DNA of 46,480 nt from Octopus bimaculoides (Eukaryota), in contig NC_068982.1 in assembly GCF_001194135.2 (NCBI RefSeq), forward strand, positions 34,638,099 to 34,684,578. Reading direction: 5' to 3'. Position numbers and translations under genes: made by a program. Shown in pieces: positions 1,940 through 39,595 of the stretch. Below the pieces are notes generated by a model. It was not told the DNA's origin, searched no databases, and was given only the letters and a program-made list of their open reading frames with translations. The number at the start of each line of letters is the position of its first letter. The first letter of the stretch is position 1.

Positions 1940-2053
1940 TCTTTTATTTGCTCCACATATCAGAGAAACCGCTTTTTGCTTAACTTCTAAGTTACTCGGT
2001 ACTCAGATATAACCGTAACACCGGTTGTCAAGCGGTGGTGGGGATCAATCACA

Positions 2054-2147
<94 letters not shown>

Positions 2148-3995: not shown

Positions 3996-4039
3996 ATTAA
4001 TATTATTATTTGTCAGGCAGTCATTCTGTTGCCAACATC

Positions 4040-4994: not shown

Positions 4995-5575
4995 GCGAAG
5001 TTTAATTTGATCCACTTTGGAAAAGAGGATACTCTGAAACTACCATATGCCCTTCCCACGAGCGACTCTCTCGTATCATCCAACAGCACCAGAGACCTTG
5101 GAGTAACTGCTGATAGCAATCTAAGCTGGAGTCCCCACATAAACAGCAAGTTTGACTTGGCCCGCAAGATGTGATCCTGGATTCTGAGAACTTTCTGGTC
5201 TAGAGATGCTCACACCATCTTCCTTCTCTACTTTACTTTTGCCCGACTCCACCTTGAATACTGTTGCTCACTGTGGTGTCCCCACACGAAGCAAAGCATT
5301 ATGAAAGCGGAATAATTCCAGAGGTCAATAACAAGAAAGATAGACGGCATGATAGGCATTGACTATAGGGGTCGACTAAAAAAACTCAACCTCTATTCTT
5401 TCCAATGCTGCCGTGAGCGCTACATCATTTCTGTGATGTGGAAAATATTCCATCAATATTGCACAAATGATGTTGGCATCAATTTTAAAATCCACCCAAG
5501 ACCTGGCTCCACGTGCTGTCTGCCCACTACAAAAATTGAACTCAAGACACATAACAACGTTACGACACAGCTACA
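4995..5575 (+). pseudogene. CR1-clade LINE reverse transcriptase C-terminal region, degenerate
   Basis: Frame 3 reads RDLGVTADSNLSWSPHI..WILRTF..RLHLEYCCSLWCPH..FQRSITRKIDGMIGIDYRGRLKKLNLYS with two in-frame stops. These are the DLGV, LEY..W.P and QR..T motifs of CR1/L2 ORF2. Confidence 0.9.
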
Positions 5576-5780
5576 GGGTGGCCCGAAAGTCTTGTTCCCC
5601 CCTACATATTGTTTATTATTGTCTTTATTATCATTATTTTATGTTTTAGCACAACCCCGCTACATGTAATGATTTGGGCCGCTATATCAAGTAAGTACCT
5701 GATAAGACCCTATTTCTTCTAGGGCACTGTTAACCAGCAATCTTACTTGGCCATGTTAAGGGAGTGGTTTCTTCTATAGC

Positions 5781-7772: not shown

Positions 7773-10050
7773 ACGGCGAGCTGGTAGAACCGTTAGTACG
7801 CCGGACAAAAAGTGCTTAGCGACATTTCCTCCGCCTTTACTCAGAACGAGTTCAAATTCCGCTGAGGTTAACTTTGCCATTCATCTTTTCGGGGTCGATA
7901 AAATAAGTACCATTTGAACACTGGAATCGATGTAATCGACTCATCCCCTCTCCCAAAATTCCTGCCTTTGTGACAAAATTTGAAACCATTATTATTATTA
8001 TTGTGTTTGTTGTCGCTATTTTGTNNNNNNNNNNNNNNNNNNNNNNNNNNNNNNNNNNNNNNNNNNNNNNNNNNNNNNNNNNNNNNNNNNNNNNNNNNNN
8101 NNNNNNNNNNNNNNNNNNNNNNNNNNNNNNNNNNNNNNNNNNNNNNNNNNNNNNNNNNNNNNNNNNNNNNNNNNNNNNNNNNNNNNNNNNNNNNNNNNNN
8201 NNNNNNNNNNNNNNNNNNNNNNNNNNNNNNNNNNNNNNNNNNNNNNNNNNNNNNNNNNNNNNNNNNNNNNNNNNNNNNNNNNNNNNNNNNNNNNNNNNNN
8301 NNNNNNNNNNNNNNNNNNNNNNNNNNNNNNNNNNNNNNNNNNNNNNNNNNNNNNNNNNNNNNNNNNNNNNNNNNNNNNNNNNNNNNNNNNNNNNNNNNNN
8401 NNNNNNNNNNNNNNNNNNNNNNNNNNNNNNNNNNNGTACCAGTTATACACTGGGGTTGATATAATCGACTTAATCCGTTTGTCTGTCCTTGTTTGTCCCC
8501 TCTGTGTGTAGCCCCTTGTGAGCAGTAAAGAAATAAAGAATAAGTACCAGTTGAACATTGGGGTAGATGTAATCGACTCATCCCCTCTCCCAAAATTCCT
8601 GCCTTTGTGACAAAATTTGAAACCATTATTATTATTATTGTGTTTGTTGTCGCTATTTTGTTTTAATTTCTGGTGCCCATCTCCCCCCACCCACCCACCG
8701 TTTGCGATGGTTGAATCATTAGTGCATCGGACAAAATGCTAAGCGGCATTTCTTCCGACTCTTCACGTTCTGAGTTTCAAATTCCGCCGAGGTCGACTTT
8801 ACCTTTCGTCCTTTCGAGGTCGATAAAAGTAGTACCAATTGAACACCCCTCCCCTTTTGGAGAATTTTATTGTTTAAATTATGTTGATTGTTTTGTTATT
8901 TATTTTGTACACTAATATTGCGCTTAACCCCCATTTGTCCTTCATGTCGTATCGTCCCTGTTTATTTTGTTATCCGGCCCTTTGTGGCCAATAAAGAAAA
9001 GATTATTATTATTAATGTGAAGGCAGCTAGATGGCAGAATCGTTAGCACCCCGACAAGATGATCTGCAGAATTTCGTCCGTGTCCACGTTCTGATTTCAA
9101 ATTTCACTGAGGTCGATTTTGTCTTTCATCCTTTCGGGATTTACTAAATAAATACCAGTTGAGGACTGGGGTTGATGTAATCGACTTGCTCCCACCCTCA
9201 AAATTTCAGTCCTTGAGAGAAAAATGTGTTGAGAGATGATATTATTGACTAAATAATTTCAAGGTGGTACCCCAGCATTTCAAGGTGGTACCACAAATTT
9301 CAGTCCTTGTGCCAATCGTGCTTGTACTTGCTATATTATTATAATTTCTGTTTCCCATCTTTCCCGTTTGAAAGATGCAGAATCGGTACAGCATCGGACG
9401 AGATGCTAAGCAACATTTCCTCTGTCTTTACATTCTGCGTTCAAATTGTGCCGGGGTCAACTTTACTCTCCATCCTCTCGCGTCCGATAAAATAAGTAAC
9501 AGCTGAATACTGAAGCCGATGTAATCGACTAGTCCCCTCCACCAAAATTTCAGGCCTTGTACCTTTAGTAGAAAAGATTATTATTATTATTGATAAGGTG
9601 GCGAGCTAGTTAGAGTCGTTAGCGTGCCGGACAAAACGCTAAGCGGCATTTCGCTCGTTTGCACGAGGTCCACTTTGCCTTTCATCCTTTCGGGGTCGAT
9701 AAATAAAGTACCAATGAAACACTGGGGTCGATGTAATCGAGTAGTCTCCTCCCACTAAATTTCAGGCCTTGTGCCGTTAGTAGAAAGGATTATTATTATT
9801 ATTATTGATTTTGCTGTTGCTATTTTATCTTAATTGCTGGTTCCTTTCTTTTTCGCTTGAATCAGCAGAATCGTTAGAGCGCCGAAAAATATAGCCTTAC
9901 TATATTTGTTTCGGCTCTTTACATTCTGAGTTCAAATGTTGCCGATGTCAACGTTTCGTGGTCGATGAAATATAGTACCAGTCAAATACTGGACTCGATG
10001 AAATCGATTTACCTTCTACCCTCAAAATTGGTGGCCTTCTGCTAAAATTA
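7773..10050 (+). mobile_element. Cluster of about 7-8 same-orientation SINE family A copies separated by (ATT)n tails
   Basis: Heads ggcgagct(g/a)g..gaatcgttag at about 7773, 8700, 9022, 9370, 9597 and 9860, plus 3' fragments at 8436-8620. All are on the + strand. Confidence 0.9.
9219..9278 (-). repeat. Exact 60-bp inverted copy of 11311-11370
   Basis: gaaaaatgtgttgagagatgatattattgactaaataatttcaaggtggtaccccagcat equals the reverse complement of 11311-11370 at 60/60 positions. Confidence 0.95.
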
Positions 10051-11939: not shown

Positions 11940-12037
11940 TATATCTAATTACACGAGCGTGTCTATGTGTTTGCGCGCTCTCCTGTTCGCTTCTTTGAGG
12001 TAACTACTAGTACAGGTATACTTATATTAGCATCAAG

Positions 12038-12083
<46 letters not shown>

Positions 12084-12923
12084 TAATGTGTGTGTGTATA
12101 GATGTCTATATATATGTGTGTGTGTATATATCAAGAATACTTGATGTTAATATAAGTATACGTGTACTAATAGTTACCTCAAAGAAGCGACCGTACGTAT
12201 ACAGAAGCGCGCGCACACACATAGACATTCTCGCGTAATTATATGCTAACACACATTAAACGTCTCCTATACACATTTTATCTTTCTCTAAATTCTAGCA
12301 GAGGAAAGTTTCTTTAGCTTACTGCCGATTCTGACAAGTACAGTATTAACTTTCAAGAACGGCATAACACCTTTTGTTCATTGATAATCTAAGTTGCCAA
12401 TGTGTTTTATTGCAGGTTAAAATCAATGCGATAACATTACAAAAGAGTTCAAGCAGAAACCGTTATCAATATTTTTCAGCCTTGTTCTTCGAAGAAATTT
12501 TATTATTAAAACTCGACTCAACAACTGAATACCACTTGGCTGATATCGCGATATGTACTATTGACTAAGAATTTTTTTTTCTTTTTTCTTTTTTGTACAT
12601 TCCGAGACTGGATGGAAAACACAATTCTAGCTTTATCAGTACAATACCAAATTTAACATCAAGAAACTAACTTTATAATCAATATACCACTTATAAGAAC
12701 ATTGTAATTTCGATAATAATTTTTGAAATAGCATTCTATGTTTAGAAATGGAGTTTAAGTACCCTTAAAATGTAGTCTTTCAATGAATTCCCTTAAAATC
12801 ATCACACACACACACACACACGCACGCTCGTTAGCATAATACGTTCCCTACATGTGTGTGGGTGCGCGTGTGTATGCATATGGATCTCTGTGTATGTTAA
12901 ACATATATGTGTGAATGCCTACA

Positions 12924-13966
12924 TTTACCTTTGCCTTAGCGAAGGCGGAAGTATTGTTTTCAGTCGTGTTTGTTTGCTTGTTTGTTTATTCGTGGACAAG
13001 ATATCTCAAGAACTGTTGGATGGATTCGGATGAAACTTTCAGGGATATTTGGCCTCGTGACTGGAACGAACTGATTCGATTTTGGGATGGAACGAACTGA
13101 TTCGATTTTGGGATCGATCCGGTACCGGACAAGGCTTCTAGATTATTCGTTATATTTACTTTAATTTACAATCTTACATCCGTTCAAGTCTTTCTCTGGT
13201 TATCTCCCTTGAAAGTACGCTCATAGTTTCCACGTAAGCTATGGTGGCGTTGCTGTTTCCAAAGTTTTATTTTCGTTTCTCCATTATTAATTTTACTCGC
13301 GTCTCTATCTCAATAAAAACTGACGGAGAAAGAAATCAAAATACATAAACAAACGGCAGCGAAACCGTTCAGAAAATAAAATAACACTAACATACATATT
13401 CAGAAACAATAATAAATTTAATTTATCCTCGACAATTCTTAGTTTTACCAAATTTGAATATATCGCTCCTGCTTAAAACCTCTTACCTACATTTCTAGCT
13501 CTGCCTTGAAGGAAGCAATAATGTTGTTAAACCTCCGTTAACAGCACCGTATGCAGATCGTTTCAGTTTTCTTTCAAGCACGGATAAATTTTTCACTATA
13601 AACCTTAATGGTCGTAAAGACACTATATCAGTGGATAGACTAAAAAAGGCCTTCATAGGAAAAACTGTCCCTGTTCCCACTGCAGGCGACACACACAGCA
13701 TTACAACCATGGCCTGCACACTCACCTTCACATTCCATGGCTACCATTGGAATCGATCAGGTACCAGACAAGGATGCTGGATTATTTTTCCGTTTTTTTT
13801 TTTACTCAATTTTTGAGAGCGGTCGGGTTCATTTTTAGTATTTTCGTTTGTGAGAGCAGTTGAGTTTATTTCAGATATTCTCATTTTAAAAATCATCCCC
13901 GGCTAATAGTTGAGAGGACTTTGGTGTTGCCTTGGTGGATGTTTGCGCTGTCTGAGTGTTCTTGTT
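12924..13966 (+). mobile_element. Helentron-associated non-autonomous element (HINE/DINE-1-like) with internal cargo
   Basis: 5' ttacc + hairpin gcctt-agcg-aaggc, (GTTT)n core, ggatcgatccgg block and 3' gccttggtggatgtttgcgctgtctgagtg end. There is a 26-bp tandem duplication at 13062-13113. The block gatc(c/a)ggtacc(g/a)gacaagg is repeated at ~13112 and ~13750. Confidence 0.65.
13505..13665 (+). pseudogene. Ty3/Gypsy integrase C-terminal (GPY/F module) fragment
   Basis: Frame 2 reads VKPPLTAPYADRFSFLSSTDKFFTINLNGRKDTISVDRLKKAF, matching the PPL.PPY.GP(F/Y)..L...K.F.I...G..DTVS.DRLKPA consensus. Confidence 0.85.
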
Positions 13967-14559: not shown

Positions 14560-14928
14560 CTACCTCTGTTTTGCAGAAAAAAGTGTAGGCGGCCATAAAT
14601 AAAAGTAGATAAGGGATTTTACATACAGTGGACAAGAAGCCTCTTTGCCCCTTCTACACAGCACATTCCTAATATCCAACTCTAATATCCAACATATATT
14701 TTTATTCTCATATTTCCCTTTATACTTCCTGTTACTCTCCCTTTCCAAAATAACTTCTTATATAATGAACTCTACTTGTACTGAAACACTCTCATATCGT
14801 CTCTGATGATGGGATATCTTTTATATCCCTGAAACAGCTGTAAGACTACCTTTCTCTTTATAAATGTCCTAGAAATATCACACTGCCTTGGCCTTGTTAT
14901 CTAATTTTATTTAACATATACCAAAACG

Positions 14929-14971: not shown

Positions 14972-14989
14972 TGAATTTATGTATGGTTT

Positions 14990-15205
14990 CAAACTTTTGT
15001 ACAAGGCCAGTAATTTTAAGGGAGAGAGTTAGTTAGCTGATACCATCGACTCCAGTACTTGACTGTTTGACTGATGTTTATTGTATTGACCCCGAAAGAA
15101 TGAAGGGCAAAGTTGACCTCGGCAGGATTTGAAGTGAGAATGTAAAGAAATACTGCTATGCATTTTGCCCATCGTGCTAACGGTTCTTCTCTCAGCCCAC
15201 TGCCT
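14990..15205 (-). mobile_element. SINE family A
   Basis: Reverse complement of the family A core (gaccccgaaagaatgaagggcaaagttgacctcggcaggatttgaa). Confidence 0.8.
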
Positions 15206-15650: not shown

Positions 15651-15704
15651 TTTGTGTATTATTAATGTTAATTCTCTAAACGAGGTATTAACAGTAACTG
15701 CACG

Positions 15705-15819
15705 ATAAAGTGAAGTATATTGCCACTTAAATGTGGCTGACCCCTACTGGGCTAAAAGCAACAGTAACATCCACCCCTAGGGGTCAGCCACATTTAAGTG
15801 GCAATATACTTCACTTTAT
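15705..15819. repeat. Perfect inverted repeat with 42-bp arms and a 31-nt spacer
   Basis: 15705-15746 (ataaagtgaagtatattgccacttaaatgtggctgaccccta) is the exact reverse complement of 15778-15819. Confidence 0.95.
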
Positions 15820-16162
15820 TGTGTATTATTGTTGGCTACGAAAATGGTCGGAGGACGAATTAATAGAGCGTCGAGAAATAGTTTTACTCCTATTAATTAC
15901 GTCGTTCATTCATGTTTTTTGGTTCAAACACCAGTACTTAAAAGTTGCTTTTCGGATTTTCAACATTAACAAAAAAGCTCCCACAGATATTTTTGGTTTT
16001 GTGACATTTTTAGAAATCGATTTTGCTGGAAATCTACGCTGAATCGTTACTATTTATATTCACTGAATAGCGTTTGAATACACAGACCATCTTAGGAGTT
16101 ACTCTGAAGTGTTGATTCACCTGCAGATTGCCTTTGGAATGTAAAAATGTTCCTGCTTCTCT

Positions 16163-20140: not shown

Positions 20141-20154
20141 CTGTTGAAAATCAA

Positions 20155-20560
20155 AGAATTTTCACTCGACTGAATCAACCTCAGTACTTATTTTGTTTTT
20201 AAGCCTTGTACTTTTTCTATCGGCATCTTTTCCCGAATCGCTAAGTTATGAGGACGTAAACACACCAAGACCGGTTGTCAAGTGGTGATAGGAGACAAAC
20301 ACAAAATCATTCACCTACGTGCGCGCGCACACAGAGATACACACAGAGACACATACACACACACGCACACACACATATACACACACGACAGGCTTCTTTC
20401 AGTTTCCATTGACCAGATCCACTCACAAGGCTTTGGTCAGCCTGGGGTTATAACAGAAGGCACTTGCCCAAGGTACCACGCAATGAGATTGAATCTGGAA
20501 CCATGTTGTTGGGAAACAAGTTTCTTATCACACAACCACGCCTGCGCCTACATATCTAAA
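20155..20560 (-). mobile_element. SINE family B, near full length
   Basis: Same block order as 1940-2420. Confidence 0.8.
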
Positions 20561-20579: not shown

Positions 20580-20775
20580 ATAAAACCTGAAATTTGGTGA
20601 GAAATGGACTTAGTCGATTACATTCACCCCAGTACTTCAATGATAGTTTACTTTATCGATCCCGATAGGATAAAAGGCAAATTCGACCACGGCGAAATTT
20701 TAACTCAGACCTAAAGACGGAGGACATGCTTCTGAGCATTTTGCCCTACGTGCTAAGGACTCTGTTAGCAGTTGC
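20580..20775 (-). mobile_element. SINE family A
   Basis: tagtcgattacattcaccccagtact..tttatcgatcccga..aaggcaaattcgacc. A near-identical fragment recurs at 21151-21201. Confidence 0.75.
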
Positions 20776-21293: not shown

Positions 21294-21348
21294 ATGGGTC
21301 ACTGATGAAGATTAATCAAATCTGAAATCATCAATGATATGACTCCAT
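21294..21348 (+). ncRNA. Type I hammerhead ribozyme motif with complete stems
   Basis: atgg-gtca CTGATGA agatt-aatca-aatct GAA a-tca-tcaa-tga-T A tgac-t-ccat. Stem I is 8 bp with a bulge, stem II is 5 bp, stem III is 4 bp with a tetraloop, and the triplet is AUA. Predicted cleavage after 21339. Confidence 0.8.
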
Positions 21349-23815: not shown

Positions 23816-24822
23816 GCTGGAAATATTTATTAAAACACATTTTTGTTGTTTGTTTTGTGTTATAGTTTGTAGTGAGAATTGTTTGTTTTGTCATTGAAGA
23901 AAATCTCTTTTATGGCTAATCTTTTTCTTTTTCTTGTTTTTGTCTGGTGTGTGTGTGTGTGAGTGTGTAAGAAAGAGCTTCAAACTATGAAAATGGAATN
24001 NNNNNNNNNNNNNNNNNNNNNNNNNNNNNNNNNNNNNNNNNNNNNNNNNNNNNNNNNNNNNNNNNNNNNNNNNNNNNNNNNNNNNNNNNNNNNNNNNNNN
24101 NNNNNNNNNNNNNNNNNNNNNNNNNNNNNNNNNNNNNNNNNNNNNNNNNNNNNNNNNNNNNNNNNNNNNNNNNNNNNNNNNNNNNNNNNNNNNNNNNNNN
24201 NNNNNNNNNNNNNNNNNNNNNNNNNNNNNNNNNNNNNNNNNNNNNNNNNNNNNNNNNNNNNNNNNNNNNNNNNNNNNNNNNNNNNNNNNNNNNNNNNNNN
24301 NNNNNNNNNNNNNNNNNNNNNNNNNNNNNNNNNNNNNNNNNNNNNNNNNNNNNNNNNNNNNNNNNNNNNNNNNNNNNNNNNNNNNNNNNNNNNNNNNNNN
24401 NNNNNNNNNNNNNNNNNNNNNNNNNNNNNNNNNNNNNNNNNNNNNNNNNNNNNNNNNNNNNNNNNNNNNNNNNNNNNNNNNNNNNNNNNNNNNNNNNNNN
24501 NNNNNNNNNNNNNNNNNNNNNNNNNNNNNNNNNNNNNNNNNNNNNNNNNNNNNNNNNNNNNNNNNNNNNNNNNNNNNNNNNNNNNNNNNNNNNNNNNNNN
24601 NNNNNNNNNNNNNNNNNNNNNNNNNNNNNNNNNNNNNNNNNNNNNNNNNNNNNNNNNNNNNNNNNNNNNNNNNNNNNNNNNNNNNNNNNNNNNNNNNNNN
24701 NNNNNNNNNNNNNNNNNNNNNNNNNNNNNNNNNNNNNNNNNNNNNNNNNNNNNNNNNNNNNNNNNNNNNNNNNNNNNNNNNNNNNNNNNNNNNNNNNNNN
24801 NNNNNNNNNNNNNNNNNNNNNN

Positions 24823-24879
24823 GAATACATACCCAGCTTTTGAATACATACCCAGCTTTTGAATACATACCCAGCTTTT
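24823..24879. repeat. 19-bp minisatellite x3 (gaatacatacccagctttt) abutting an assembly gap
   Basis: Three exact units at 24823, 24842 and 24861. The unit is the last 19 nt of the adjacent RT fragment. Confidence 0.9.
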
Positions 24880-25225
24880 GCTTTCCTCAGAATCAGTGTT
24901 GGTGGTATCAAGCACAGTACAAAGATCAGTGGGGACAGGCAGTCTCCTTGGAAGATGCCCCTCCTAATTTCTACTGTCCCTAAACTTCTTCCGTATGCTG
25001 TCAGGTCCGTCCTCCAATTCGCCATACTTTTTCCAAGCAATCGCCCAACATTCGATGCAATACCAAATAGGTTTATACATTCCATAATCCAAGAATGTGG
25101 GATTATATCGTACGCCTTATGATAGTCGATCCATGACATTGCTAAGTTACTTTTCTTCCTCTTGCAGTCTCTAAGTACAGTTTTGTCTATCTGCACTTAC
25201 GCTTGCAACCCTTCTGCTCATGTGG
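24862..25225 (-). pseudogene. R4/Dong-clade reverse transcriptase fragment (subdomains ~2-4)
   Basis: QKGCKRK..QIDKTVLRDCKRKKSNLAMSWIDYHKAYDIIPHSWIMECI..RRGIFQGDCLSPLIFVLCL, containing the IDYxKAYD and GIFQGDxLSP motifs. Confidence 0.92.
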
Positions 25226-25359: not shown

Positions 25360-25800
25360 GTTTTGATTTTTTGGTACAAGGCCAGCGATTTTAGGAGGGG
25401 AAGACAGTCGAGTACATCGCTTCTAATGTTAAGTGGTATTTATTTTATTAACCACAAATGGATGAAAGATAATGTCGATCTTGGCGAAATTTGAACTTAG
25501 AAGGTAAAGAGCTGCATGAAATGCTGCTGAGCATTTTGTCCGACGAACGAAAGAACGATTCTACCAGTTCGCCGTCTTAACAACAACAATAACAACAGCA
25601 ACCACCACCACCACCACCACCACCACCACTACAATAACAACAGCAACAACAATCCTGAAATTTTGGGAATAAGGGTCGATTACATTGACTCCGGTGCTCA
25701 ACACGAAAATAATAAAAGGCAAAGTCGACATCGCCGAAGTTTGAACTCAGAACGTAAAGACACACGGAATGCCACTAAGCACTTTGTCCGGCATGCTAAC
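25360..25800 (-). mobile_element. Two SINE family A copies separated by a (CAA)n/(CCA)n tail
   Basis: The reverse-complement family A core occurs twice (about 25360-25577 and 25635-25800). Confidence 0.75.
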
Positions 25801-25932
25801 GCATAAAATGATGAAGCAATGTTATAATGAAGCAATGTTATAATGAAGCAATGTTATACTACAGCAATGAAATAATTGTAGTAAATTGTTGGTTCAAATT
25901 TTAATGACTGTTATTTAGATCCGAGAACTCAC

Positions 25933-27038: not shown

Positions 27039-27662
27039 AAGAGAGAGAGAGAGATAGTGAGATAGAGAGAGAGAGAACATGATGGTAGAAGAAAGAAAAC
27101 AAGCCGGAAGAAGTGGAGAGATTGAAATTGAGTGATTAGTTAAAACAAAACTATAAATATTTGCATATATCATGTCCTCGCATTGTTGTTTTTACTTGTT
27201 TTGTTTTTTCTTTCTTTATTTTTATGAATTATATACATACATACACAAACACATGCACGTGCGCACGCAGACACACGCACACACACAACACGCACACACA
27301 CACACATACACACATTCATATATATATACACGTACATAATCGTACATACATATATGAGAACTTGGTATTAATGTGCGTAAAAGCCACGCTTGGTTACGTA
27401 GGGAGGAGTCACATGTGATTAAGCGAAAAAATGTTTCGCCTTATTTTAAAGCAGGAAACTTGTTAATCTTACCTCTAAGACTGGTTCACATCGCTTATTG
27501 AATTTTCCGAGTGAAATAAATAGCTTCTAAGAAATGTGCGGTCGTGATGAATTTCTCTGTGAGATACCGGAGCAACGAACTGTATAGTTTATATATGTTG
27601 TTCCTGGCTGTTTTAGTTCTTTAGCATCCAGTGTTCTTTTCTTCAATATTTTCATTTATCAG

Positions 27663-27765
27663 ATGGAAGGTAGAACAGCTACAGTAACAAAAGAGAAGTT
27701 AAAGAGTCATTTTTATGACAATTTATCATTCTCTACATCAGAAGTTATATTTCTCAGAAAATGTG
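27663..27765 (+). CDS. Candidate exon MEGRTATVTKEKLKSHFYDNLSFSTSEVIFLRKC(G)
   Basis: Acceptor cttttcttcaatattttcatttatcAG and donor G|GTAAGA. Only frame 0 is open; the exon ends in phase 1. Confidence 0.35.
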
Positions 27766-27781
27766 GTAAGAATAGATGGTA

Positions 27782-27821
<40 letters not shown>

Positions 27822-28333
27822 AAGAGCACTTTCAGTATTTTGGATATCTGAAAAAGGAAGTTGCTTTCAAGCCGTAATTGCCATAAAGATTAGAATCTAA
27901 TACTAGACATAATATGTCTTCCTCTCAAGGAAAGAAAAAAACAAATGCGAGCGTAACTGAACCGAAACAGAAGAGGTTACATGAGGTGGAAATCATTAAA
28001 AGTTTCACCACCGCAACCGCAACAGTTAAACTACCACCAACTAAAATAACACCGATAGCATAATAGCAGTAGTAAAACAGCAGCAACAATATCAACAACT
28101 TCTTCAGCAATTATGGTAACAAAGGCAAGTGCCAATTATTTCTTGCGTTATTACAGACATAAAATAAACTAACAAGTTTGTAAGTTTGTTTTAGAAATAA
28201 TTTGTCCAGAAGATCATAGACTATCCACGTAATAAACAAAAGGTGGAGTATGATAGAAGAAAGGAAAAGCCAACGATGGAACCTCTATATGGACACTCAA
28301 CCTGCTAGGAATGGTAGCAAAATTCTCAAACTT

Positions 28334-28510
28334 TGTAACTGTGGATATACATCTCAAAAACGACACTTTCTGGTGGTTGTGAAAGGAATTGCACGAGACT
28401 CACCGCAAACACCTTTAAAACCCAATACAATACGCATATACAATGATCAGAGACAAACAGAAACTTAACTCCATCTCTTTGTCAGAATTTACTTGGATAC
28501 TAAGGAACTG
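28334..28510 (+). pseudogene. Penelope-like GIY-YIG endonuclease remnant
   Basis: With frameshifts: CNC..LSGGC..LTANTFKTQYNTH..NSISLSEFTWILRN. This parallels the CNC..CPLxGxC / TxNxFKxRYxxH / NxTxLSxxIWxLK pattern of PLE endonucleases. Confidence 0.55.
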
Positions 28511-29094
28511 CAGATCTGAATGTGTCCTAATAACTTGAAACAGCATGGACAGACAACCCATTCACACAAAAAGTCATACTGAGTAAGCTTAATTTCAGAT
28601 GGACGATGCAGGGACAAAGGATGGAATTATTACGGTTTTAATGCATTTGATCTGCGTTATCAGGGCCGAACAGGACTTAAACAACATTAACAGGTGAAGC
28701 ACGGCGTCTTGATTTGTCTCTCGTATTAGTTAAAGAAAAATATGTCAACTAAAATTTGATTTGGAGTTAACACAGGTCTGATTATGATTTAATTTTGTAA
28801 ATGTCCTAACCGTTAGATATACTTTCGCCTACAAACCAGTTCTACAAAAAGACCAGTAAATAAGGAAGTAACAACTTTAGTTTAATTTCAAATGATGAAA
28901 AGAAAAATGTAATGTAGGACTTATCGCTCAGCTGTCGTTAATTTTATTCCGTATTTTTTCTTTCGTTACTAGTTTCAGCTAAATTGACATGATTTTCTTT
29001 TATGAATTTTATTAATTATTATGAATAAAATTTAACATATATAATCTAATGAAATGATTCAGTCACAATATGAGCTAGTGGAGGATGCGCCTGT

Positions 29095-29280
29095 TGGCGG
29101 TCATTCAACCTAGCTAGAAATTACAACCAAGTCTCTCTCAAATAATAGTATATTGGTAAATGGAGTGCTAGACAATGTCCCTGAAACAAAGATGATGCGA
29201 GTTGGACGCTTTTGATCATAGCTTTGATCATAAGTTTCCTGTATCAAGGGTGACCTGGGGCAATGCAATAAAAACAACAA
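29095..29280 (+). repeat. Dispersed repeat family D
   Basis: Paralogue of 6200-6420, ending ..gggtgacctggggcaatgcaataaaaacaacaa. Confidence 0.55.
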
Positions 29281-29491
29281 TTAAACGTTTATTTGATTTT
29301 GATCGTAGAAACTACAAAATATCGTTCTAGCTTAAGAAAAAGGGCATTTTAGAACCGAAATAAAAAAAAAATCGTCTAAAAGTCCTTCAGCAGTCATATT
29401 TTTATCTTTTAATGGTTCTCATGTAAAGCTATATCTCCACCAGGAAATAGGTAACATTTGTCAAAAGCACATTAAACCTCTTCTGTTTCAG

Positions 29492-29694
29492 GATGTCCCC
29501 TTGAATTTGATAATGTAACAAGATTATTTTTCCCACACCGATTACTGTACCATATTGTGCATTTACTTTGTGTTTCTTTCACCATTACCTCGGCAAATAA
29601 GATCAAGGCCATGCTACGTCAACGAGGTCACAATAAGGCCAAAACATTTCAGGAAAAATATATTGTGCTTACTTATGCGCATATCAATTTCTAG
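29492..29694 (+). CDS. Candidate terminal exon, phase-compatible with 27663-27765
   Basis: Acceptor ctcttctgtttcAG; phase-1 frame GCPLEFDNVTRLFFPH..TYAHINF* is open for 66 codons to TAG at 29692-94. Confidence 0.25.
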
Positions 29695-30038
29695 ATAACT
29701 ATTCAACGTAAATATGTTAAAAACACTTCTGCATAAATATGTTAAAATTAAGTTTATTATTTTTCATTCAGCTAGTGTTTTTGAATTAGTCCCGAGAAAG
29801 CCTACACAAACAGATTGAAACAATACACAGAATATTGAGATGCGAATTATATTCCTGATTTGAGAGTTGCAAAATAACTGGGAATTAGAAAATAGATAAG
29901 GTTCTGTTAAAGGAGAAATTCAACAACTTTGATACCTTTAATATCTGTATCTATTTATGCATCTATCTAGTCGCTTACTTATGATTTACATAAGTTTGTG
30001 AAGGAGAAACAGGCTTCTCTATCCAGCTGGCAAGCTAC

Positions 30039-30081
30039 TTCAGGCTGATGACGAGCAAAGACTCAGAAACATGTCCCTGAA
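30039..30081 (+). ncRNA. Minimal type I hammerhead ribozyme motif
   Basis: ttcagg CTGATGA c gag-caaaga-ctc a GAAAC at GTC cctgaa. Stem I is 6 bp, stem II is 3 bp, helix III is palindromic (ACATGT), and the triplet is GUC. Predicted cleavage after 30075. Confidence 0.8.
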
Positions 30082-31028
30082 TGCTGGCTAGGCTGGGTGG
30101 GGGAGCTTGTCTCCCCTTCACAAACTTAAGGACACAGTAATTGTGTCAAGGCCGACAGGAAGCGGTCCAGCTTCCTAGGGCTAAACAGCAGTAGTGTATT
30201 ACCTTATTGGGATTGTCACATTAAGTTGACAATATACTACAACTTTGTCGCTCCACTACTGCTTAAATCTCTCTGAGAGATTTAGAAATATTATATTTCT
30301 AATATATATATNNNNNNNNNNNNNNNNNNNNNNNNNNNNNNNNNNNNNNNNNNNNNNNNNNNNNNNNNNNNNNNNNNNNNNNNNNNNNNNNNNNNNNNNN
30401 NNNNNNNNNNNNNNNNNNNNNNNNNNNNNNNNNNNNNNNNNNNNNNNNNNNNNNNNNNNNNNNNNNNNNNNNNNNNNNNNNNNNNNNNNNNNNNNNNNNN
30501 NNNNNNNNNNNNNNNNNNNNNNNNNNNNNNNNNNNNNNNNNNNNNNNNNNNNNNNNNNNNNNNNNNNNNNNNNNNNNNNNNNNNNNNNNNNNNNNNNNNN
30601 NNNNNNNNNNNNNNNNNNNNNNNNNNNNNNNNNNNNNNNNNNNNNNNNNNNNNNNNNNNNNNNNNNNNNNNNNNNNNNNNNNNNNNNNNNNNNNNNNNNN
30701 NNNNNNNNNNNNNNNNNNNNNNNNNNNNNNNNNNNNNNNNNNNNNNNNNNNNNNNNNNNNNNNNNNNNNNNNNNNNNNNNNNNNNNNNNNNNNNNNNNNN
30801 NNNNNNNNNNNNNNNNNNNNNNNNNNNNNNNNNNNNNNNNNNNNNNNNNNNNNNNNNNNNNNNNNNNNNNNNNNNNNNNNNNNNNNNNNNNNNNNNNNNN
30901 NNNNNNNNNNNNNNNNNNNNNNNNNNNNNNNNNNNNNNNNNNNNNNNNNNNNNNNNNNNNNNNNNNNNNNNNNNNNNNNNNNNNNNCACACACACACACA
31001 CACGCACACATACACACACGCACACACA

Positions 31029-31108
<80 letters not shown>

Positions 31109-31542
31109 AACACACACATTATGGATAGTTAGGGTAAATCTCAGCTGCTTCCTCTTGAAGCACATCTCCTTTTCCCATTATTATAATCTAATATGTGATC
31201 ACAGTTGCTGTTGCATGTTAGTCAAAATGCATATTAAAATTGAGAATTATGGAAATATTGTGTGCAGAGCTATTGCATAACAAAATAAGAAAGTGGAAAA
31301 TTTTTGGTATTATTTATTATCCAATACATGTATTTCATTTGCTAACAGGAATTACAAAGTTTAACATGTTAGATAGACATATAAGGAATTTCCTATTGGA
31401 GATTCTTTAGACAGGGGAAAAAAGTATAATAAGTCCCTACTTTCCTATAGGGGCATTTGAGGGCGCTTAATTACCTGTATGTTACCCTTTTCAAACCAGT
31501 TAAAAAGTTTCTACTTCTTTCAGATCACCTTTGCCAGATAAA

Positions 31543-31800
31543 ATGCTAACTACAAGAAACGAAAAACAAAAAGACATGCAGTTGTTGTTGCCATATATGC
31601 GGAACACAGTGATTTAGAAATTGCTAGCTATCTAAATGTTGCATGATCTTTCGTACACAAAGTTTGGATTGAATTGGAAGTCTGTGTCGGGAATGTTTTA
31701 ACTGTATCAATGAGAATAAAATCATTCTGGACGCTCGGACTCTACGAGGTACCACAGTTCACCTAATGGATTCAAAATATTATCGATGTAAATGTAGAAA
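31543..31800 (+). pseudogene. Tc1/mariner-superfamily transposase N-terminal HTH remnant
   Basis: KRHAVVVAIYAEHSDLEIASYLNVA*SFVHKVWIELE..RSDSTR..PQFT*WIQNIIDVN, with stops and frameshifts. It has the EIA..L.V.RS.V.KV HTH pattern. Confidence 0.6.
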
Positions 31801-32190
31801 ACTATAAAATGTGCTAATTGGAGGATCGTACCTCTCCATAGCAGAATAACATATTCTGTTGTTACCGAGAGGAATTTAACTGTCTCAGATCAAGCATCAT
31901 TAAAGCCCGTTACAATCTGCGTTTTTACTCATGAAGATTGGGAAACATAAAAATAACTCCATTGCGTTTTTTTCTAATTCATTCAGAAGCTAAAGGACGG
32001 TAGATTTGAATATGCCTCCAAAAGCATGACTGTAAAATTATGAACTGTCACATGAAAAAATAAATAAATGAATAATTCTAAAACACGAAAAGTACGATAT
32101 TGTAGGTTAAGGTCGCTTGAAACGTTTCAACTTGAAACTGAAAGTCTGAGATATTCTCCGTTTTTTGTTACCGGACACATTTTCTTTTAG

Positions 32191-32281
32191 ATAACTTCTT
32201 TTCATCCAAAGTATCCGTGAAACAAATAATGTAGACACACCATAATCGTTAGAGAGTAGCCTCTACACTCCCAACAAATCT
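32191..32281 (+). other. Candidate non-coding/UTR exon
   Basis: Acceptor cacattttcttttAG and donor T|GTAAGT, but stops occur in all three frames. Confidence 0.2.
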
Positions 32282-32582
32282 GTAAGTTGTCCTGTACAGA
32301 ACACAAACTAAGTATAAGAGTAGCAATATTATCTGAAAAGTTGAAACACAAATAATTGTCTGACCATTTTCGACCAATAAGAGTCAACTTAAACAATGCT
32401 TCATTTTATTTCATTTAATCGGTGCCTGAACGTGAGTAGTTGGCATGAAGCTCTGAGTGGCAATGGAGGAACTCATCAGCTTCGTTTATGGGAAATGTTT
32501 TGAATAAGCTTATAAAAGCTCCAATTCTGATGTGCCGACTACAGTCTAATGATGCCAACTGGTGATACCAGACTTTTGGGAT

Positions 32583-32774
32583 CACACGCACACACCATCA
32601 ATCTATCTCCGCCAGTCACCAAAATACAATACATTGTCGCTAGCACATTATACCAATGTCAACTCTTGGCTGTCAATATCGGTTGGCACGACACATTACA
32701 ACAAAGTGAGGCAGAGTAGAAAAGACGACAATGTGATTAACACTCAGAAGGGATCAGTTCAAAGCCATCATTAA
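32583..32774 (+). repeat. ~192-bp direct duplication of 35767-35959
   Basis: About five differences (4 substitutions, 1 indel) by eye. Confidence 0.95.
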
Positions 32775-32869
32775 TGTAGGATAAATTTAGTAATAATACT
32801 AAATGGTCATGGATGAAAGTTATAAATATTTTAATGCATTGCTACGCGCGTTTCCACGAATCACGTTTC

Positions 32870-33068
32870 TTAAGATCATAGCCCGTATTCCTGGGATGAT
32901 TACTGTACAGTCCGTAGTATCCATGGACATCGGGTAGATCGTATTCATGCATTCATTTCTTCCGACGATATGGCATTAACGGATGTTTAAGTGAGGGGGT
33001 TGTTTATCAATTTTGACCAATAAAAAGGTTGACTTTAATCATCGAAGGAATACGGACTATGATCTTAA
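32870..33068. mobile_element. Kolobok-like MITE (TTAA TSD, RR termini)
   Basis: TTAA at 32870-73 and 33065-68. TIR gatcatag(c/t)ccgtattcct..gatgatta is about 29 bp, with one mismatch in the outer part and a 2-nt internal mismatch. Confidence 0.65.
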
Positions 33069-33386
33069 GATTCATATTATTACGATACACGTGTATGTGA
33101 GTGTGTGTGTATGTGTGTGTGTGTGTGTGTGTGTGTAACTTTTACATTTGTTTGCTGGAAACGTTTTGAATATGCAAGTAAAGCTCCTATTCTATTACGC
33201 TGGCCACAGTCTAATGATGCTGACTAGTGAACCAGTTTTTTGGAGTTGCATCGAGCTGTACCAATATAATGTAGGATAAATATAGCCATAATAACAATAA
33301 TCATTGGACACATATATATGTACATATGAATAAATGTGCATAAATCCGTCTATCTATCTTTCTAACCATTTCTCTCTCTCTCTCTA

Positions 33387-33419
<33 letters not shown>

Positions 33420-34524: not shown

Positions 34525-35094
34525 AATTTTGAATTTTCCATTTGCAAACATATTTAGATATTCAATAGACAGAATTTTTCTAACAGATGAATCTTTAACT
34601 TGTTTATGTACTCTTAGGTGATGCATCAGTTTTGATCCTGTTCAGCCGATCTAATTCGCATTGCATTACATACATGTATTGCAGTAAATTAATTTTTTTG
34701 TTTTGCAATTCATGTTTGCATTAACCTTCAATTCCTTGTCATTCGTGAAACTTTTGGTTGTTCTCTATTCAAATATTTAAATTATCTCACACGTCCCACT
34801 ACGAGTGTCTCCGCCTTTGGTTCTCTGCAAAATTTCTAATTTGAAAGCTTGTCTTTGCTAAGAGACTTTTTTAAAGATTTGGTGGCTGTCTTTCGGTTGC
34901 TGATAATTTGCTAAGCTTTAATTATATTCCATACATGTCACGATTAATGTAAGACTGAAAGCTTCGTTTAGCTGAATATAAGATGCTCTGGTTTATAGGG
35001 TTATAGGAAAGATAAAGCAACCCAACTCCAATCAGCACCTACAGTCCAATGCGATTCTTACAATAGGCTGTTTAACAAACGATTTTAAGTTTAA

Positions 35095-35309
35095 CAGCTC
35101 TTTCTGTTATAAGTTGCAGTGGACTCATAGTTGAATACCTGAGTAACATCTTACAGCTTCACCGGAGCCTCGAATATGAAGTGCAATTTAATTGTAATTA
35201 TTCTCCCCCAAAAAGTTACATTTCATATTCGAGGTTCTGATGAATGTATGGGGTGTTACTGAGGCACTCAACTCTGAGTCCACCGCATCTTATAACGGAA
35301 ACAGCTGTA
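35095..35309. mobile_element. Tc1/mariner-type MITE with ~95-bp diverged inverted arms
   Basis: Right end ..cttataacggaaacagctg|TA mirrors left cagctctttctgttataag. The arms pair throughout (e.g. gcctcgaatatgaa / ttcatattcgaggt) around a ~27-nt centre. Confidence 0.75.
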
Positions 35310-37250: not shown

Positions 37251-39157
37251 GTAGACTACCCGTGACCCGTTGGGTCACCTGGAAGTCTGAGTTTCCCACC
37301 AACGAAGTTTTGTTTTTGGTTTTGTTTTTTTTCCATGTTATTTCGCATACTTTCAACGAATGTGACATCGAAATCACGCGCAAACGGCTCCTTTCCCCAG
37401 AAAAAGAAAGATTTGGCTGCTATTTCTTGCATGCCCTGCTACCACGTAACAGCTATTTGCTATAAAGGGCTAGAAACAGCAGTTACGTGGTCGCAGGGCG
37501 TGTTAGAAATAGCACCAAAATCTTTGGAGGCGAGATAAGTTGAATGCACTCGAAAGAAACCTATGGAAAAAGAACTATTTCACACCGAGGTTACGAACGG
37601 GTCTTTTACGAAATATTTACCGTATTTTTAAAGTCATTTTCAATTAAAGATATTTTGCCCATCATAATGTGTCTAATGAAAAGGTTAGAGTGTCTTCCCT
37701 TCCAGGNNNNNNNNNNNNNNNNNNNNNNNNNNNNNNNNNNNNNNNNNNNNNNNNNNNNNNNNNNNNNNNNNNNNNNNNNNNNNNNNNNNNNNNNNNNNNN
37801 NNNNNNNNNNNNNNNNNNNNNNNNNNNNNNNNNNNNNNNNNNNNNNNNNNNNNNNNNNNNNNNNNNNNNNNNNNNNNNNNNNNNNNNNNNNNNNNNNNNN
37901 NNNNNNNNNNNNNNNNNNNNNNNNNNNNNNNNNNNNNNNNNNNNNNNNNNNNNNNNNNNNNNNNNNNNNNNNNNNNNNNNNNNNNNNNNNNNNNNNNNNN
38001 NNNNNNNNNNNNNNNNNNNNNNNNNNNNNNNNNNNNNNNNNNNNNNNNNNNNNNNNNNNNNNNNNNNNNNNTGTTCCGCGTGTATTCACATTTCAGTGGC
38101 ACCTTACTTTGAAAGTATTTTCCCCATTATAGGCCGGTTTGGCAATTTAAAAACTTACCCGAAAAAACCGTGCATCTCGGTAACCCGTGAACCGATTTAC
38201 GCAAAACTTATTTTATTCCGTTTGTATTCACATGTGTCTCCAATTCATGACATCTGCTTTTGTCTCTTTCCCTCTGTTTCGCCAGACGCTCAGCTCTCCG
38301 AGTGTCCGATTCCTGATCTCTTCTGCTTCTGTCTGTTTCCCTCTGTTCCACCAGATGCTCAGCCATTGCTTTATCAGTCTCATCGATCCTTTTATTCGCA
38401 TGCCTGTCCCGATCTTGGGTAAATATTTCGTAAATGATCCGTTCGTACTTCGGTGTGAAATAATTTTTTCCACGGGTTTTTTTCGAGTACATTCAACATA
38501 TCTCACCTCCAAACCCACCGCAAGCCACTTTCTTCCGGAAAAGAAAGGGGGAGGGGTTGTGGGGACTTTGGTGTTTCCCGGAAAACTCTGAGTTTCCCAC
38601 CAACGGAGTTTTGTTTCATGGGATTTGCTTTCTTTCTCAGGCTATTTCGCATACTTTCAACGAATGTGACGTCGATATCACGCGTAAACGGCTCCTTTAC
38701 CCAGTAAAGAAAATAATTTGGCTGCTTTTTCTTGCATGTCCTGCTACCACGTAACAGCTATTTCTGGTCCTTTATTGCAAATAGCTGTTACCTGGTAGCA
38801 GGGCGTGTTAGAAGTAGCAGCCAAATCTTTGGAGGTGAGATACGTTGAATTCACTCCAAAAAACCTATGGAAAAAAATTATTTCACACCGTGTTTACGAA
38901 CAGATCTTTAACGAAATATTTACCGTATTTTCAAAGTCATTTTCACTTTATAATATTTTTCAAATATGCCATAAAAAATTTTGTAATGGTATTCACTTGA
39001 AAATAATTCAAAAAGAAATTAAAATATTGTGTTTAAAGAAAACTAAAATATAAATACTTACTGTACAAACAACTTACATTTTTGAAATTACATTCACTTA
39101 AAAATATTTCTAAATGATTAAAATATTGTGTTTCATTGTTAATAGCATATAGATAGA
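37251..39157 (-). mobile_element. Non-autonomous Helitron derivative with internal duplication and inversion
   Basis: Minus strand: 5' A|TCTATCTATAT at 39157. The 3' hairpin gtgaccc-aac-gggtcac (37262-78) is followed by CTAC|T, one base from CTAG. A ~380-bp module is present twice (37287-37660, 38587-38970), and a ~100-bp part of it is inverted at 38415-38515. Confidence 0.65.
38253..38410 (-). pseudogene. STPR-type 23-aa repeat fragment (Helitron RepHel N-terminus-like)
   Basis: 69-bp DNA period (units start at 38253 and 38322). The translation ETDKAMAEHLVEQRETDRSRRDQ / ESDTRRAERLAKQRERDKSRCHE has the E1-R6-R9L10-R14-R20 spacing. Confidence 0.65.
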
Positions 39158-39237: not shown

Positions 39238-39444
39238 TTAGCTGCGGTAAAAGGCCTGAAGGACGACTCCCTCATTGCACTGGGCGTCAAAACACCTGAA
39301 ACTCATAGACATGCGAGACAACTCGCCACAGATCCCATTCAGGAGCGATGGATACCGATATTTCACCATTTTTGTGGTTTATCATTCGAACCGGGGACGA
39401 AAAATATATATAAATACATCTCCCCACTAATATCAATATCATAA
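39238..39444 (+). CDS. Candidate exon LAAVKGLKDDSLIALGVKTPETHRHARQLATDPIQERWIPIFHHFCG..
   Basis: Acceptor gttttgtttgttcgccAG in a CpG-rich unique stretch. The frame is open to the stop at 39444. No convincing donor and no homology recognised. Confidence 0.2.
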   Translation, partial: LAAVKGLKDDSLIALGVKTPETHRHARQLATDPIQERWIPIFHHFCGLSFEPGTKNIYKYISPLISIS

Positions 39445-39595
39445 TCCTTTCAAATTTTGGTCCCAAACCTGCAGATTTTGAGGGGTGGGGGAGATTGATC
39501 TAATAGACCCCTGTACTCAACTGCTACTTATTTTATCGACCCCCTAATGGATGAAAAGAAATGATGACTTCGGCAGTATTTGAACTCGGAACACA
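39440..39595 (-). mobile_element. SINE family A
   Basis: ..ctcaactgctacttattttatcgaccccc..ggatgaaaag..cggcagtatttgaactc is the reverse complement of the core. Confidence 0.75.

What the first reader, a model, noticed from the sequence alone, without database searches (positions are those of the whole stretch)
29991..30301. Retrozyme-like structured element: hammerhead capping a ~50-bp rod plus five to six further hairpins
Seen: 29991-30035 pairs with 30083-30128 (36 Watson-Crick pairs, 6 G-U, 3 mismatches, 1 bulge) and continues into hammerhead stem I (ttcagg/cctgaa). G-U pairs outnumber A-C mismatches 6 to 2 on the ribozyme strand. Downstream hairpins are gacaca/tgtgtc (30131-47), aggaagc/gcttcct (30157-76), agcagtagtg/cactactgct (30187-96/30254-63) enclosing attgtca/tgacaat (30212-33), taaatctct/agagattta (30264-84) and agaaata/tatttct (30284-300). 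Known: animal retrozymes are a few hundred nt, non-coding, highly paired, often tandem, and their palindromic helix III works in dimers. Inference: an RNA-level-selected, viroid-like element. The 675-N gap immediately downstream could hide a tandem copy supplying the second ribozyme half.
Basis: partly seen in the sequence, partly recalled or inferred. Interest (0 to 1): 0.88.

Follow-up and report, generated by a model that had tools for sequence, protein, structure and literature searches.

The report
Solitary hammerhead ribozyme retroelement relic
This is a real animal-type hammerhead ribozyme motif at the tip of a long RNA hairpin. It is most likely a lone, probably inactive copy of a well-known class of small ribozyme-carrying retroelements (retrozymes), not a new kind of element.

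Summary
29991-30035 pairs with 30083-30128 exactly as described, and the rod runs into helix I of a hammerhead at 30039-30081. The 311 nt fold far better than shuffles on both strands (z -8.8 and -8.5).

The motif is a canonical metazoan type I hammerhead:
- All core bases are intact, with a 6-bp helix I, a UAC bulge and a CAAAGA loop 2.
- Helix III (GAAACAUGUC) is identical to a published axolotl retrozyme ribozyme that cleaves well only as a dimer.
- The base pair of helix II is a C·A mismatch.
- Rfam scores it below threshold.

Published retrozymes also place their ribozyme at the tip of a helix-I-extended rod, so the layout is ordinary for the class.

The "single 311-nt viroid-like unit" reading is only partly supported:
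- The last 125 nt (30177-30301) belong to a separate hairpin-rich interspersed repeat. It occurs without any hammerhead at 2150-2290 and 15655-15835.
- There is no tandem unit upstream and no second copy in the window.
- No Penelope-like element (PLE) ORF lies nearby.
- 11 of 14 assembly gaps abut microsatellites, so the 675-N gap more likely hides (TA)n/(CA)n than a second ribozyme.
- The 6:2 G·U to A·C excess is not significant (p = 0.145).

Verdict: a new member of a known kind, of modest interest.

The parts
29991..30035 (+). 5' arm of the rod that extends hammerhead helix I
   Evidence: Pairs with 30083-30128: 36 WC, 6 G·U, 3 mismatches and 1 bulge. Upstream 29860-29990 is unstructured, z -0.8.
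30036..30044 (+). UAC bulge (loop 1, 30036-38) and 5' strand of helix I (UUCAGG, 30039-44)
   Evidence: The 6-bp helix I followed by an internal loop matches the canonical metazoan type I layout described in PMC4209133.
30045..30051 (+). Hammerhead core box C3-A9 (CUGAUGA)
   Evidence: Sequence, HH9 alignment and descriptor scan.
30052..30065 (+). Helix II and loop 2: C10.1, GAG, CAAAGA, CUC, A11.1. The basal pair is a C·A mismatch.
   Evidence: Flagged as a non-standard pair in the HH9 alignment. The axolotl HHR_Amex2 has a U·U mismatch at the same place (PMC7229834).
30066..30075 (+). Core GAAA (30066-69), helix III palindrome ACAUGU (30069-74) and C17 (30075). The predicted cleavage is between 30075 and 30076.
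   Evidence: GAAACAUGUC is identical to the axolotl Ax330 retrozyme ribozyme. As a monomer, helix III is 1 bp plus a CAUG tetraloop, so efficient cleavage would need a dimer.
30076..30081 (+). 3' strand of helix I (CCUGAA)
30082..30128 (+). 3' arm of the rod (U30082 lies opposite the UAC bulge)
30129..30176 (+). Two small hairpins (GACACA/UGUGUC and AGGAAGC/GCUUCCU). Unique in the window and probably the 3' part of the hammerhead-bearing unit.
   Evidence: z -3.2. nhmmer finds no other copy.
30177..30301 (+). Copy of a separate hairpin-rich interspersed repeat that ends in (TA)n. It has an outer 10-bp stem, an inner hairpin and two tail hairpins.
   Evidence: Homologous to 2150-2290(-) and 15655-15835(-): blastn E 6.5e-8 and nhmmer E 1e-5 to 7e-5. 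Both other copies begin at the equivalent of 30177-30182 and lack a hammerhead. z is -3.6 on + and -4.6 on -.
30302..31108 (.). (AT)5, a 675-N gap, then (CA)50(TA)12: a compound microsatellite at the 3' end of the element
   Evidence: 11 of 14 gaps in the window abut microsatellites.

Best explanation
29991-30176 is a lone genomic copy of a hammerhead-carrying, non-coding retroelement. It belongs to the animal "non-LTR retrozyme" kind, which is related to the terminal repeats of Penelope-like elements (PLEs). It abuts a copy of an unrelated hairpin-rich interspersed repeat (30177-30301) and a (TA)n/(CA)n microsatellite.

Shown here:
- On the + strand RNA, 30039-30081 has every conserved base and the helix sizes of a canonical metazoan type I hammerhead.
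- Its helix I continues into a 42-bp rod, as in validated retrozymes.
- The ribozyme-competent fold is only 2.8 kcal/mol above the MFE.

Inferred mechanism for the family:
1. Read-through transcription produces the RNA.
2. Two ribozymes pair through the ACAUGU palindrome to build a stable helix III.
3. Cleavage after C30075 gives 2',3'-cyclic phosphate and 5'-OH ends.
4. A tRNA ligase circularises unit-length RNA from tandem arrays.
5. A PLE-type reverse transcriptase copies it back into AT-rich or (TA)n DNA.

Inferred for this copy: it has no partner ribozyme in view, and the basal pair of helix II is C·A instead of G-C. It is therefore most likely a dispersed, weakly cleaving or inactive relic, not a source of circular RNA.
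For: - Core and helices.
- The descriptor is expected 0.003-0.012 times per window.
- The Rfam HH9 local hit has E = 4e-4.
- Helix III is identical to axolotl Ax330, and axolotl Ax353 has a mismatch at the base of helix II.
- Published retrozymes fold with 23-31 pairs enclosing the ribozyme core.
- The element is non-coding.
- GC is 44% and the fold z is -8.8.
- The active-like fold is -71.0 against an MFE of -73.8.
- The 3' end lies at (TA)n, fitting the AT-rich/(TA)n targeting of PLEs.
- Dispersed monomers are a described state of retrozymes.
- No partner was found.
Against: - No paralogue of the rod or ribozyme could be obtained, so family membership rests on architecture alone.
- The Rfam score is far below gathering.
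- The conserved G10.1-C11.1 pair is absent.
- The rod is longer and more perfect (48 enclosing pairs) than in the four published examples.
- Long DNA-level palindromes are common in this window.
- The strand asymmetry (6 G·U to 2 A·C) is not significant.
- The downstream side is hidden by a gap.
Confidence: 0.55

Rival explanations
1. It is the first unit of a tandem retrozyme array that continues into the 675-N gap. A second ribozyme there would allow dimeric cleavage and circular RNA production.
For: Retrozymes are typically tandem and are hard to assemble from short reads. The helix III palindrome implies dimeric action. The gap starts only 236 nt after the cleavage site.
Against: There is no unit upstream. 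The sequence before the gap is the 3' end of a different repeat family followed by (AT)5, and (CA)50(TA)12 follows the gap. 11 of 14 gaps in the window abut microsatellites.
Confidence: 0.12
2. It is a 5'-truncated insertion or solo terminal repeat (pLTR) of an autonomous Penelope-like element, not a non-autonomous retrozyme.
For: PLEs carry hammerheads near their 3' ends, target (TA)n or AT-rich DNA and leave truncated and inverted copies. Retrozymes and pLTRs are phylogenetically intermingled. A PLE-style minimal hammerhead-like motif lies at 14803-14850.
Against: This ribozyme is the canonical form (6-bp helix I, 4-position helix II, loop-loop motifs), not the minimal PLE form (7-8-bp helix II, 4-5-bp helix I). 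No Pfam domain of any kind appears in six frames of 27400-29990 and 31110-33400.
Confidence: 0.15
3. It is an exapted, single-copy cis-acting hammerhead in a host transcript, like the conserved intronic HH9/HH10 ribozymes of amniotes.
For: The best Rfam match is HH9. It is a single copy in the window. All 13 core bases and the whole of helix I are intact although the element looks old.
Against: The score is 22.8 against a gathering score of 52. There is a C·A mismatch at the base of helix II. The motif is embedded among repeats and microsatellites. No gene context could be established, and no orthologues were available.
Confidence: 0.07
4. It is a DNA-level inverted repeat (foldback or MITE-like) whose centre resembles a hammerhead by chance or decay, with no RNA-level role.
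For: The window holds several long palindromes with stronger z-scores. The - strand also folds with z -6.0. The G·U to A·C ratio gives p = 0.145. The arms start and end with TA.
Against: A hammerhead descriptor hit is expected 0.003 times per window. Helix I is in exact register with the rod. The bulge, loop 2 and helix III match canonical animal ribozymes base for base. The other palindromes are near-perfect and lack G·U pairs, unlike this one.
Confidence: 0.06

Closest known systems
Animal non-LTR retrozymes (Cervera & de la Pena 2020, PMC7229834), especially the axolotl Rtz_331 unit with HHR_Amex1
   Same: - A type I hammerhead with 6-bp helix I and the CAAAxA-type loop 2.
- Helix III GAAACAUGUC is identical.
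- The ribozyme sits at the tip of a rod made by flanking sequence.
- The element is non-coding, below 50% GC, and falls in the 170-400-nt size range.
   Different: - No tandem repeat is visible, and there is a single copy in the window.
- The base of helix II is C·A.
- The rod is longer and more regular.
- The 3' third is a different interspersed repeat.
- Expression and circularity are unknown.
Minimal hammerheads in the pseudo-LTRs of Penelope-like elements (Cervera & de la Pena 2014, PMC4209133)
   Same: - A type I hammerhead with a palindromic, dimer-type helix III.
- It is associated with retroelements that insert at AT-rich or (TA)n DNA.
- It has an extra or unpaired nucleotide at the 5' base of helix II.
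   Different: - PLE motifs have a 7-8-bp helix II and a 4-5-bp helix I with no loop-loop motif, and they keep G10.1-C11.1.
- This motif has canonical helix sizes.
- No RT/GIY-YIG ORF lies within about 2.5 kb.
Rfam RF02275 Hammerhead_HH9 (conserved intronic hammerhead of amniotes)
   Same: It is the best-scoring Rfam family. The core, the helix I length, the internal loop and the CAAAAA-like loop 2 all correspond.
   Different: The score is 22.8 bits against a gathering score of 52. Helix III is much shorter, there is a mismatch in helix II, and no evidence of orthologous conservation.
Schistosoma Sm-alpha SINE-like hammerhead element and newt satellite 2 (from my own knowledge and citations in PMC4209133)
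   Same: Short, non-coding, dispersed or tandem repeats that carry a canonical type I hammerhead with a UAC bulge and a weak helix III.
   Different: Those are high-copy families with demonstrated cleavage. Copy number and activity are unknown here.
Hammerhead viroids and viroid-like circular RNAs
   Same: A highly paired RNA with a hammerhead whose weak helix III favours cleavage in multimers.
   Different: Those are autonomous RNA replicons, usually with ribozymes in both polarities. This is a DNA-encoded, single-polarity motif in an animal genome, with no ribozyme on the - strand.

Membership tests
Hammerhead ribozyme, canonical metazoan type I | Conserved core C3 U4 G5 A6 N7 G8 A9 / G12 A13 A14 / A15.1-U16.1 / H17 | tested here: met
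   CUGAUGA 30045-51, GAAA 30066-69, U30074 and C30075.
Hammerhead ribozyme, canonical metazoan type I | Type I topology with 6-bp helix I, about 4-bp helix II, loop 1/loop 2 motifs, and a 1-2-bp helix III with a palindromic loop | tested here: met
   Helix I is 6/6 bp with a UAC bulge, loop 2 is CAAAGA and helix III is A-CAUG-U. The definition comes from PMC4209133.
Hammerhead ribozyme, canonical metazoan type I | G10.1-C11.1 pair at the base of helix II | tested here: not met
   C30052·A30065 is marked non-standard in the cmscan alignment. A natural precedent for a mismatch at this position is U·U in HHR_Amex2.
Hammerhead ribozyme, canonical metazoan type I | Reaches the gathering score of an Rfam hammerhead model | tested here: not met
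   No gathering hit in the window. HH9 scores 22.8 bits against 52.
Hammerhead ribozyme, canonical metazoan type I | Self-cleavage at H17 | not testable with these tools
   Needs in vitro transcription of monomer and dimer constructs.
Animal non-LTR retrozyme | Head-to-tail tandem repeats of 150-450 bp, each with one hammerhead | tested here: inconclusive
   There is no unit upstream (score 45 against shuffles 35.7±6.3) and no second copy in the window. Downstream is hidden by the gap, which is probably microsatellite.
Animal non-LTR retrozyme | Non-coding, GC below 50%, highly self-paired RNA with the ribozyme in a rod | tested here: met
   The longest open frame is 48 aa and has no homologues. 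GC is 44% and z is -8.8. Validated retrozymes have the same layout.
Animal non-LTR retrozyme | Multi-copy family in the genome, expressed as linear and circular RNA | not testable with these tools
   No eukaryotic genome or transcriptome of the source was reachable. Pattern scans of metagenome and viral collections found nothing.
Penelope-like element pseudo-LTR | Flanks an ORF with reverse transcriptase and GIY-YIG endonuclease | tested here: not met
   No Pfam hit in six frames of 27400-29990 and 31110-33400.
Penelope-like element pseudo-LTR | Minimal hammerhead: long helix II (6-8 bp), short helix I (4-5 bp), little or no helix III | tested here: not met
   Helix II has 4 positions and helix I has 6 bp, continuing into a rod.
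Penelope-like element pseudo-LTR | Insertion at AT-rich or (TA)n targets | tested here: met
   The 3' end abuts (AT)n. The abutting sequence belongs to the separate 3' repeat, so this is only weak support.
HH9/HH10-type exapted hammerhead | Conserved at an orthologous, usually intronic, position across species | not testable with these tools
   No related genomes were available. The one contig fetched (L001) is from another species and has no related sequence.

The most novel reading that the evidence does not exclude
The hammerhead rod (29991-30176) and the 3' hairpin/(TA)n module (30177-30301) together form a previously undescribed composite retrozyme family in this genome, which from memory is probably an octopod cephalopod. 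The ribozyme unit would have captured the 3' tail of an abundant microsatellite-targeting interspersed repeat and would use that tail for mobilisation, not a PLE terminal repeat.

A further untested twist: all three A·C mismatches (30005, 30008 and the base of helix II at 30065) place the A opposite a C. That is the geometry favoured by A-to-I editing, which would close them.
Probability: 0.1. Interest if true: 0.55.

Novelty: new member of a known kind. Interest (0 to 1): 0.3.

Why it matters
It adds one more lineage to the list of animals whose genomes carry canonical type I hammerheads of the retrozyme kind. If my recognition of the repeats is right, that lineage is a cephalopod. The papers I could search name no hammerhead retrozyme in cephalopods.

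It also shows how such a motif sits next to other hairpin-rich repeats, which a sequence-only reading can merge into one "viroid-like" element.

In itself the locus is probably inert. It becomes useful only as a seed for a genome-wide search that could define the family, its copy number and its partner retrotransposon.

Tried and rejected
1. Paralogues through proteins. A concatenate of all open frames of 29880-30311 was searched against 5.8 billion proteins and gave no hit at E <= 10.
2. Exact-pattern scans of the metagenome and viral collections. I used the ribozyme core plus helix II and the tail hairpin, and found nothing.
3. Organism identification.
   - The LINE RT fragment 24822-25196(-) gave only unnamed ENA hits at <= 69% identity.
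   - The one contig fetched is from another species.
   - A window ORF is not on record.
   - A text search for the SINE sequence in papers found nothing.
   - The octopod assignment therefore rests on my memory of the SINE/microsatellite composite repeat and was not tested.
4. Cryptic tandem unit upstream. Short direct repeats at a spacing of about 315 bp suggested one, but the local alignment is no better than shuffles. Rejected.
5. tRNA-like head. ARAGORN finds none in the window.
6. Covariation in the 3' module. With only three copies, the outer stem shows 3 compensatory pairs, but the whole structure does not exceed the shuffles (167/500).
7. A covariance model from four published retrozyme hammerheads plus the HH9 consensus. 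MAFFT misaligned the 3' half, so I dropped it.
8. Rfam weak hits to miRNA families (MIR7996, mir-878). These reflect only the hairpin shape.

Full report
**Setting**

The window is a draft animal-type assembly with 33% GC and 14 N-gaps, and it is saturated with (TA)n, (CA)n, (GA)n and (ATAC)n microsatellites. It carries fragments of LINE reverse transcriptase. It also carries a tRNA-SINE-like repeat with an internal microsatellite, which I recognise from memory as typical of octopod cephalopods. That identification could not be tested.

A UAC/U internal loop and the 6-bp stem ttcagg/cctgaa follow.
- The 311 nt fold at -131.2 kcal/mol (z -8.8) on the + strand and -116.4 (z -8.5) on the - strand.
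- The rod with its tip gives z -8.4 on + and -6.0 on -.
- The six downstream hairpins are all in the MFE structure.
- The sequence just upstream (29860-29990) is unstructured, z -0.8. The structured region therefore starts at about 29991.

**The hammerhead is real and canonical**

- 30045-30075 reads CUGAUGA-C-GAG-CAAAGA-CUC-A-GAAA-CAUG-U-C. All conserved core positions are present, and C17 is at 30075.
- Rfam finds nothing at gathering thresholds. A narrow scan aligns 30030-30090 end to end with Hammerhead_HH9 at 22.8 bits, E = 4e-4 for that search.
- My own structural descriptor requires CUGANGA, at least 3 bp in helix II, GAAA, U-H and helix I. It is expected 0.003 times (helix I >= 6) to 0.012 times (helix I >= 4) per window in 2000 shuffles, so the match is not chance.
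- Cervera and de la Pena define canonical metazoan type I hammerheads this way: helix I of 6 bp, helix II of 4 bp, interacting loops, and a helix III of 1-2 bp capped by a small palindromic loop that forces dimeric action. This motif fits that definition. It does not fit the minimal PLE form, which has a 7-8-bp helix II and a 4-5-bp helix I.
- Helix III, GAAACAUGUC, is identical to that of the cloned axolotl retrozyme Ax330. Ax330 cleaves 6% in an hour as a monomer but efficiently as a dimer.
- The one departure is the base of helix II, which is C30052·A30065 instead of G-C. The axolotl HHR_Amex2 has a U·U mismatch there and still cleaves, slowly. From established hammerhead biochemistry, loss of G10.1 should lower activity. 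I therefore rate this copy as weakly active at best.

**The rod is the normal retrozyme layout**

I folded the four experimentally validated retrozyme clones (coral, mussel and two axolotl) from the paper's supplement. In each, 23-31 predicted pairs enclose the ribozyme core, meaning the flanks extend helix I. Here 48 pairs do so. The arrangement is the same but longer and more regular. The ribozyme-competent secondary structure costs only 2.8 kcal/mol relative to the MFE. The element is non-coding and has 44% GC, as described for animal retrozymes.

**The 311 nt are not one unit**

- The last 125 nt (30177-30301) are homologous to 2150-2290(-) and to 15655-15835(-).
- Both other copies start at the equivalent of 30177-30182, and neither has a hammerhead or rod.
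- At 2.1 kb the module sits exactly between the 3' end of a SINE body and that SINE's microsatellite.
- At 15.7 kb the module is duplicated in inverted orientation into a perfect 57-bp palindrome, z -17.9.
- This is therefore a separate, hairpin-rich interspersed repeat that ends in or targets (TA)n.
- Its outer stem is kept in all three copies with three compensatory pairs. With three sequences, though, the structure as a whole does not beat the shuffles, and it folds at least as well on the - strand.
- The hammerhead-bearing unit proper is thus 29991-30176, about 186 nt.
- It remains open whether the two modules travel together as a composite retrozyme or merely lie side by side.

**No partner ribozyme is in view**

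- blastn and nhmmer find no second copy of the rod or ribozyme in the window.
- The upstream 390 nt do not resemble the element.
- The gap is preceded by (AT)5 and followed by (CA)50(TA)12. 11 of 14 gaps in this window abut microsatellites. The simplest reading is an unresolved compound microsatellite, not a hidden tandem unit.
- No protein domain of any kind is detectable within about 2.5 kb on either side, so the motif is not attached to a PLE ORF.

**RNA-level selection is not demonstrated**

- The 6:2 excess of G·U over A·C gives a one-sided binomial p of 0.145.
- Both strands fold far better than shuffles.
- The window holds several other long, near-perfect palindromes. A high z-score alone is therefore weak evidence in this genome.
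- What argues for an RNA-level origin is the exact register between the rod and helix I, and the base-for-base match of the bulge, loop 2 and helix III to known active ribozymes.

**Interpretation**

The most likely reading (0.55) is a dispersed, solitary copy of a non-LTR retrozyme-type element, probably inert. Such monomers are a described state of these families, and retrozymes are now regarded as non-autonomous derivatives of PLE terminal repeats. PLE enzymes nick AT-rich DNA, and several clades prefer (TA)n. That is compatible with the microsatellite at the 3' side.

The rivals are:
- the first unit of an array hidden in the gap (0.12);
- a truncated PLE terminal repeat (0.15);
- an exapted HH9-like cis ribozyme (0.07);
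- a DNA-level foldback with a fortuitous core (0.06).

**An untested idea**

All three A·C mismatches, including the one at the base of helix II, place the A opposite a C. That is the context preferred by adenosine deaminases acting on long double-stranded RNA. In a cephalopod host, editing would close them.

**Verdict**

This is a new member of a known kind, of modest interest. Its main value is as a seed for a genome-wide search.

Noticed in passing
window 14799-14850 (+): A second hammerhead-like motif of the PLE "minimal" style: GUCU-CUGAUGA-U-GGGAUAU-CUUUU-AUAUCCC-U-GAAAC-AGCUGU-A-AGAC. It has a 7-bp helix II with U·U at its base, the palindrome ACAGCUGU in place of helix III, and a 4-bp helix I. 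It gets no Rfam hammerhead hit.
   Followed up: partly
window 21296-21345 (+): A third descriptor hit: GGGUCA-CUGAUGA-AGAUU-AAUCA-AAUCU-GAAA-UCAUCAAUGAU-A-UGACUC, with a 6-bp helix I, a 5-bp helix II and a 4-5-bp helix III. Rfam gives only weak C/D-box snoRNA-like hits (snoU2_19 at 23.9 bits against 39), so its nature is unclear.
   Followed up: partly
window 15688-15835: A near-perfect 57-bp palindrome (-95.5 kcal/mol, z -17.9). It is an inverted duplication of the same repeat family as 30177-30301.
   Followed up: partly
window 37283-37656 and 38584-38959; hairpins 37400-37532 and 38706-38836: Two 84.5%-identical direct copies of another repeat. Each contains a hairpin of about 45 bp (z about -11), and there are further inverted fragments between them.
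   Followed up: no
window 1950-2420 (-) and 20150-20545 (-): A composite repeat made of a tRNA-SINE-like body, an internal (TA)n/(TG)n microsatellite and a second conserved half (…ccaccaccgcttgacaaccggtg…). From memory this is typical of octopod genomes. The 2.1-kb copy has the 125-nt hairpin module inserted exactly at the start of its microsatellite.
   Followed up: partly
window 11943-12244 and 35094-35308: Two further long imperfect palindromes: self-inverted blastn hits of 302 and 215 bp at 74-76% identity.
   Followed up: no
all 14 N-gaps, e.g. 14311, 17681, 26056, 33451, 42740: 11 of 14 gaps are bordered by (TA)n or other microsatellites. The gaps in this assembly therefore mark unresolved simple repeats.
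   Followed up: yes
window 24822-25196 (-), 4934-5700 (+), 13499-13813 (+): Retrotransposon debris. It includes a LINE RT fragment interrupted by a gap (homologues carry PF00078) and a LINE C-terminal region. One ORF ends in a retroviral-integrase-like …SVDRLKKAF motif, which is my reading and was not searched.
   Followed up: partly
window 1362-1508, 3591-4010, 7778-8024, 8539-8846, 9032-9844, 14983-15187, 20587-20764, 25373-25801, 39438-39592: A very abundant repeat family of about 150-370 bp, with at least nine copies in 46 kb at 68-96% identity. It is unrelated to the hammerhead element.
   Followed up: no
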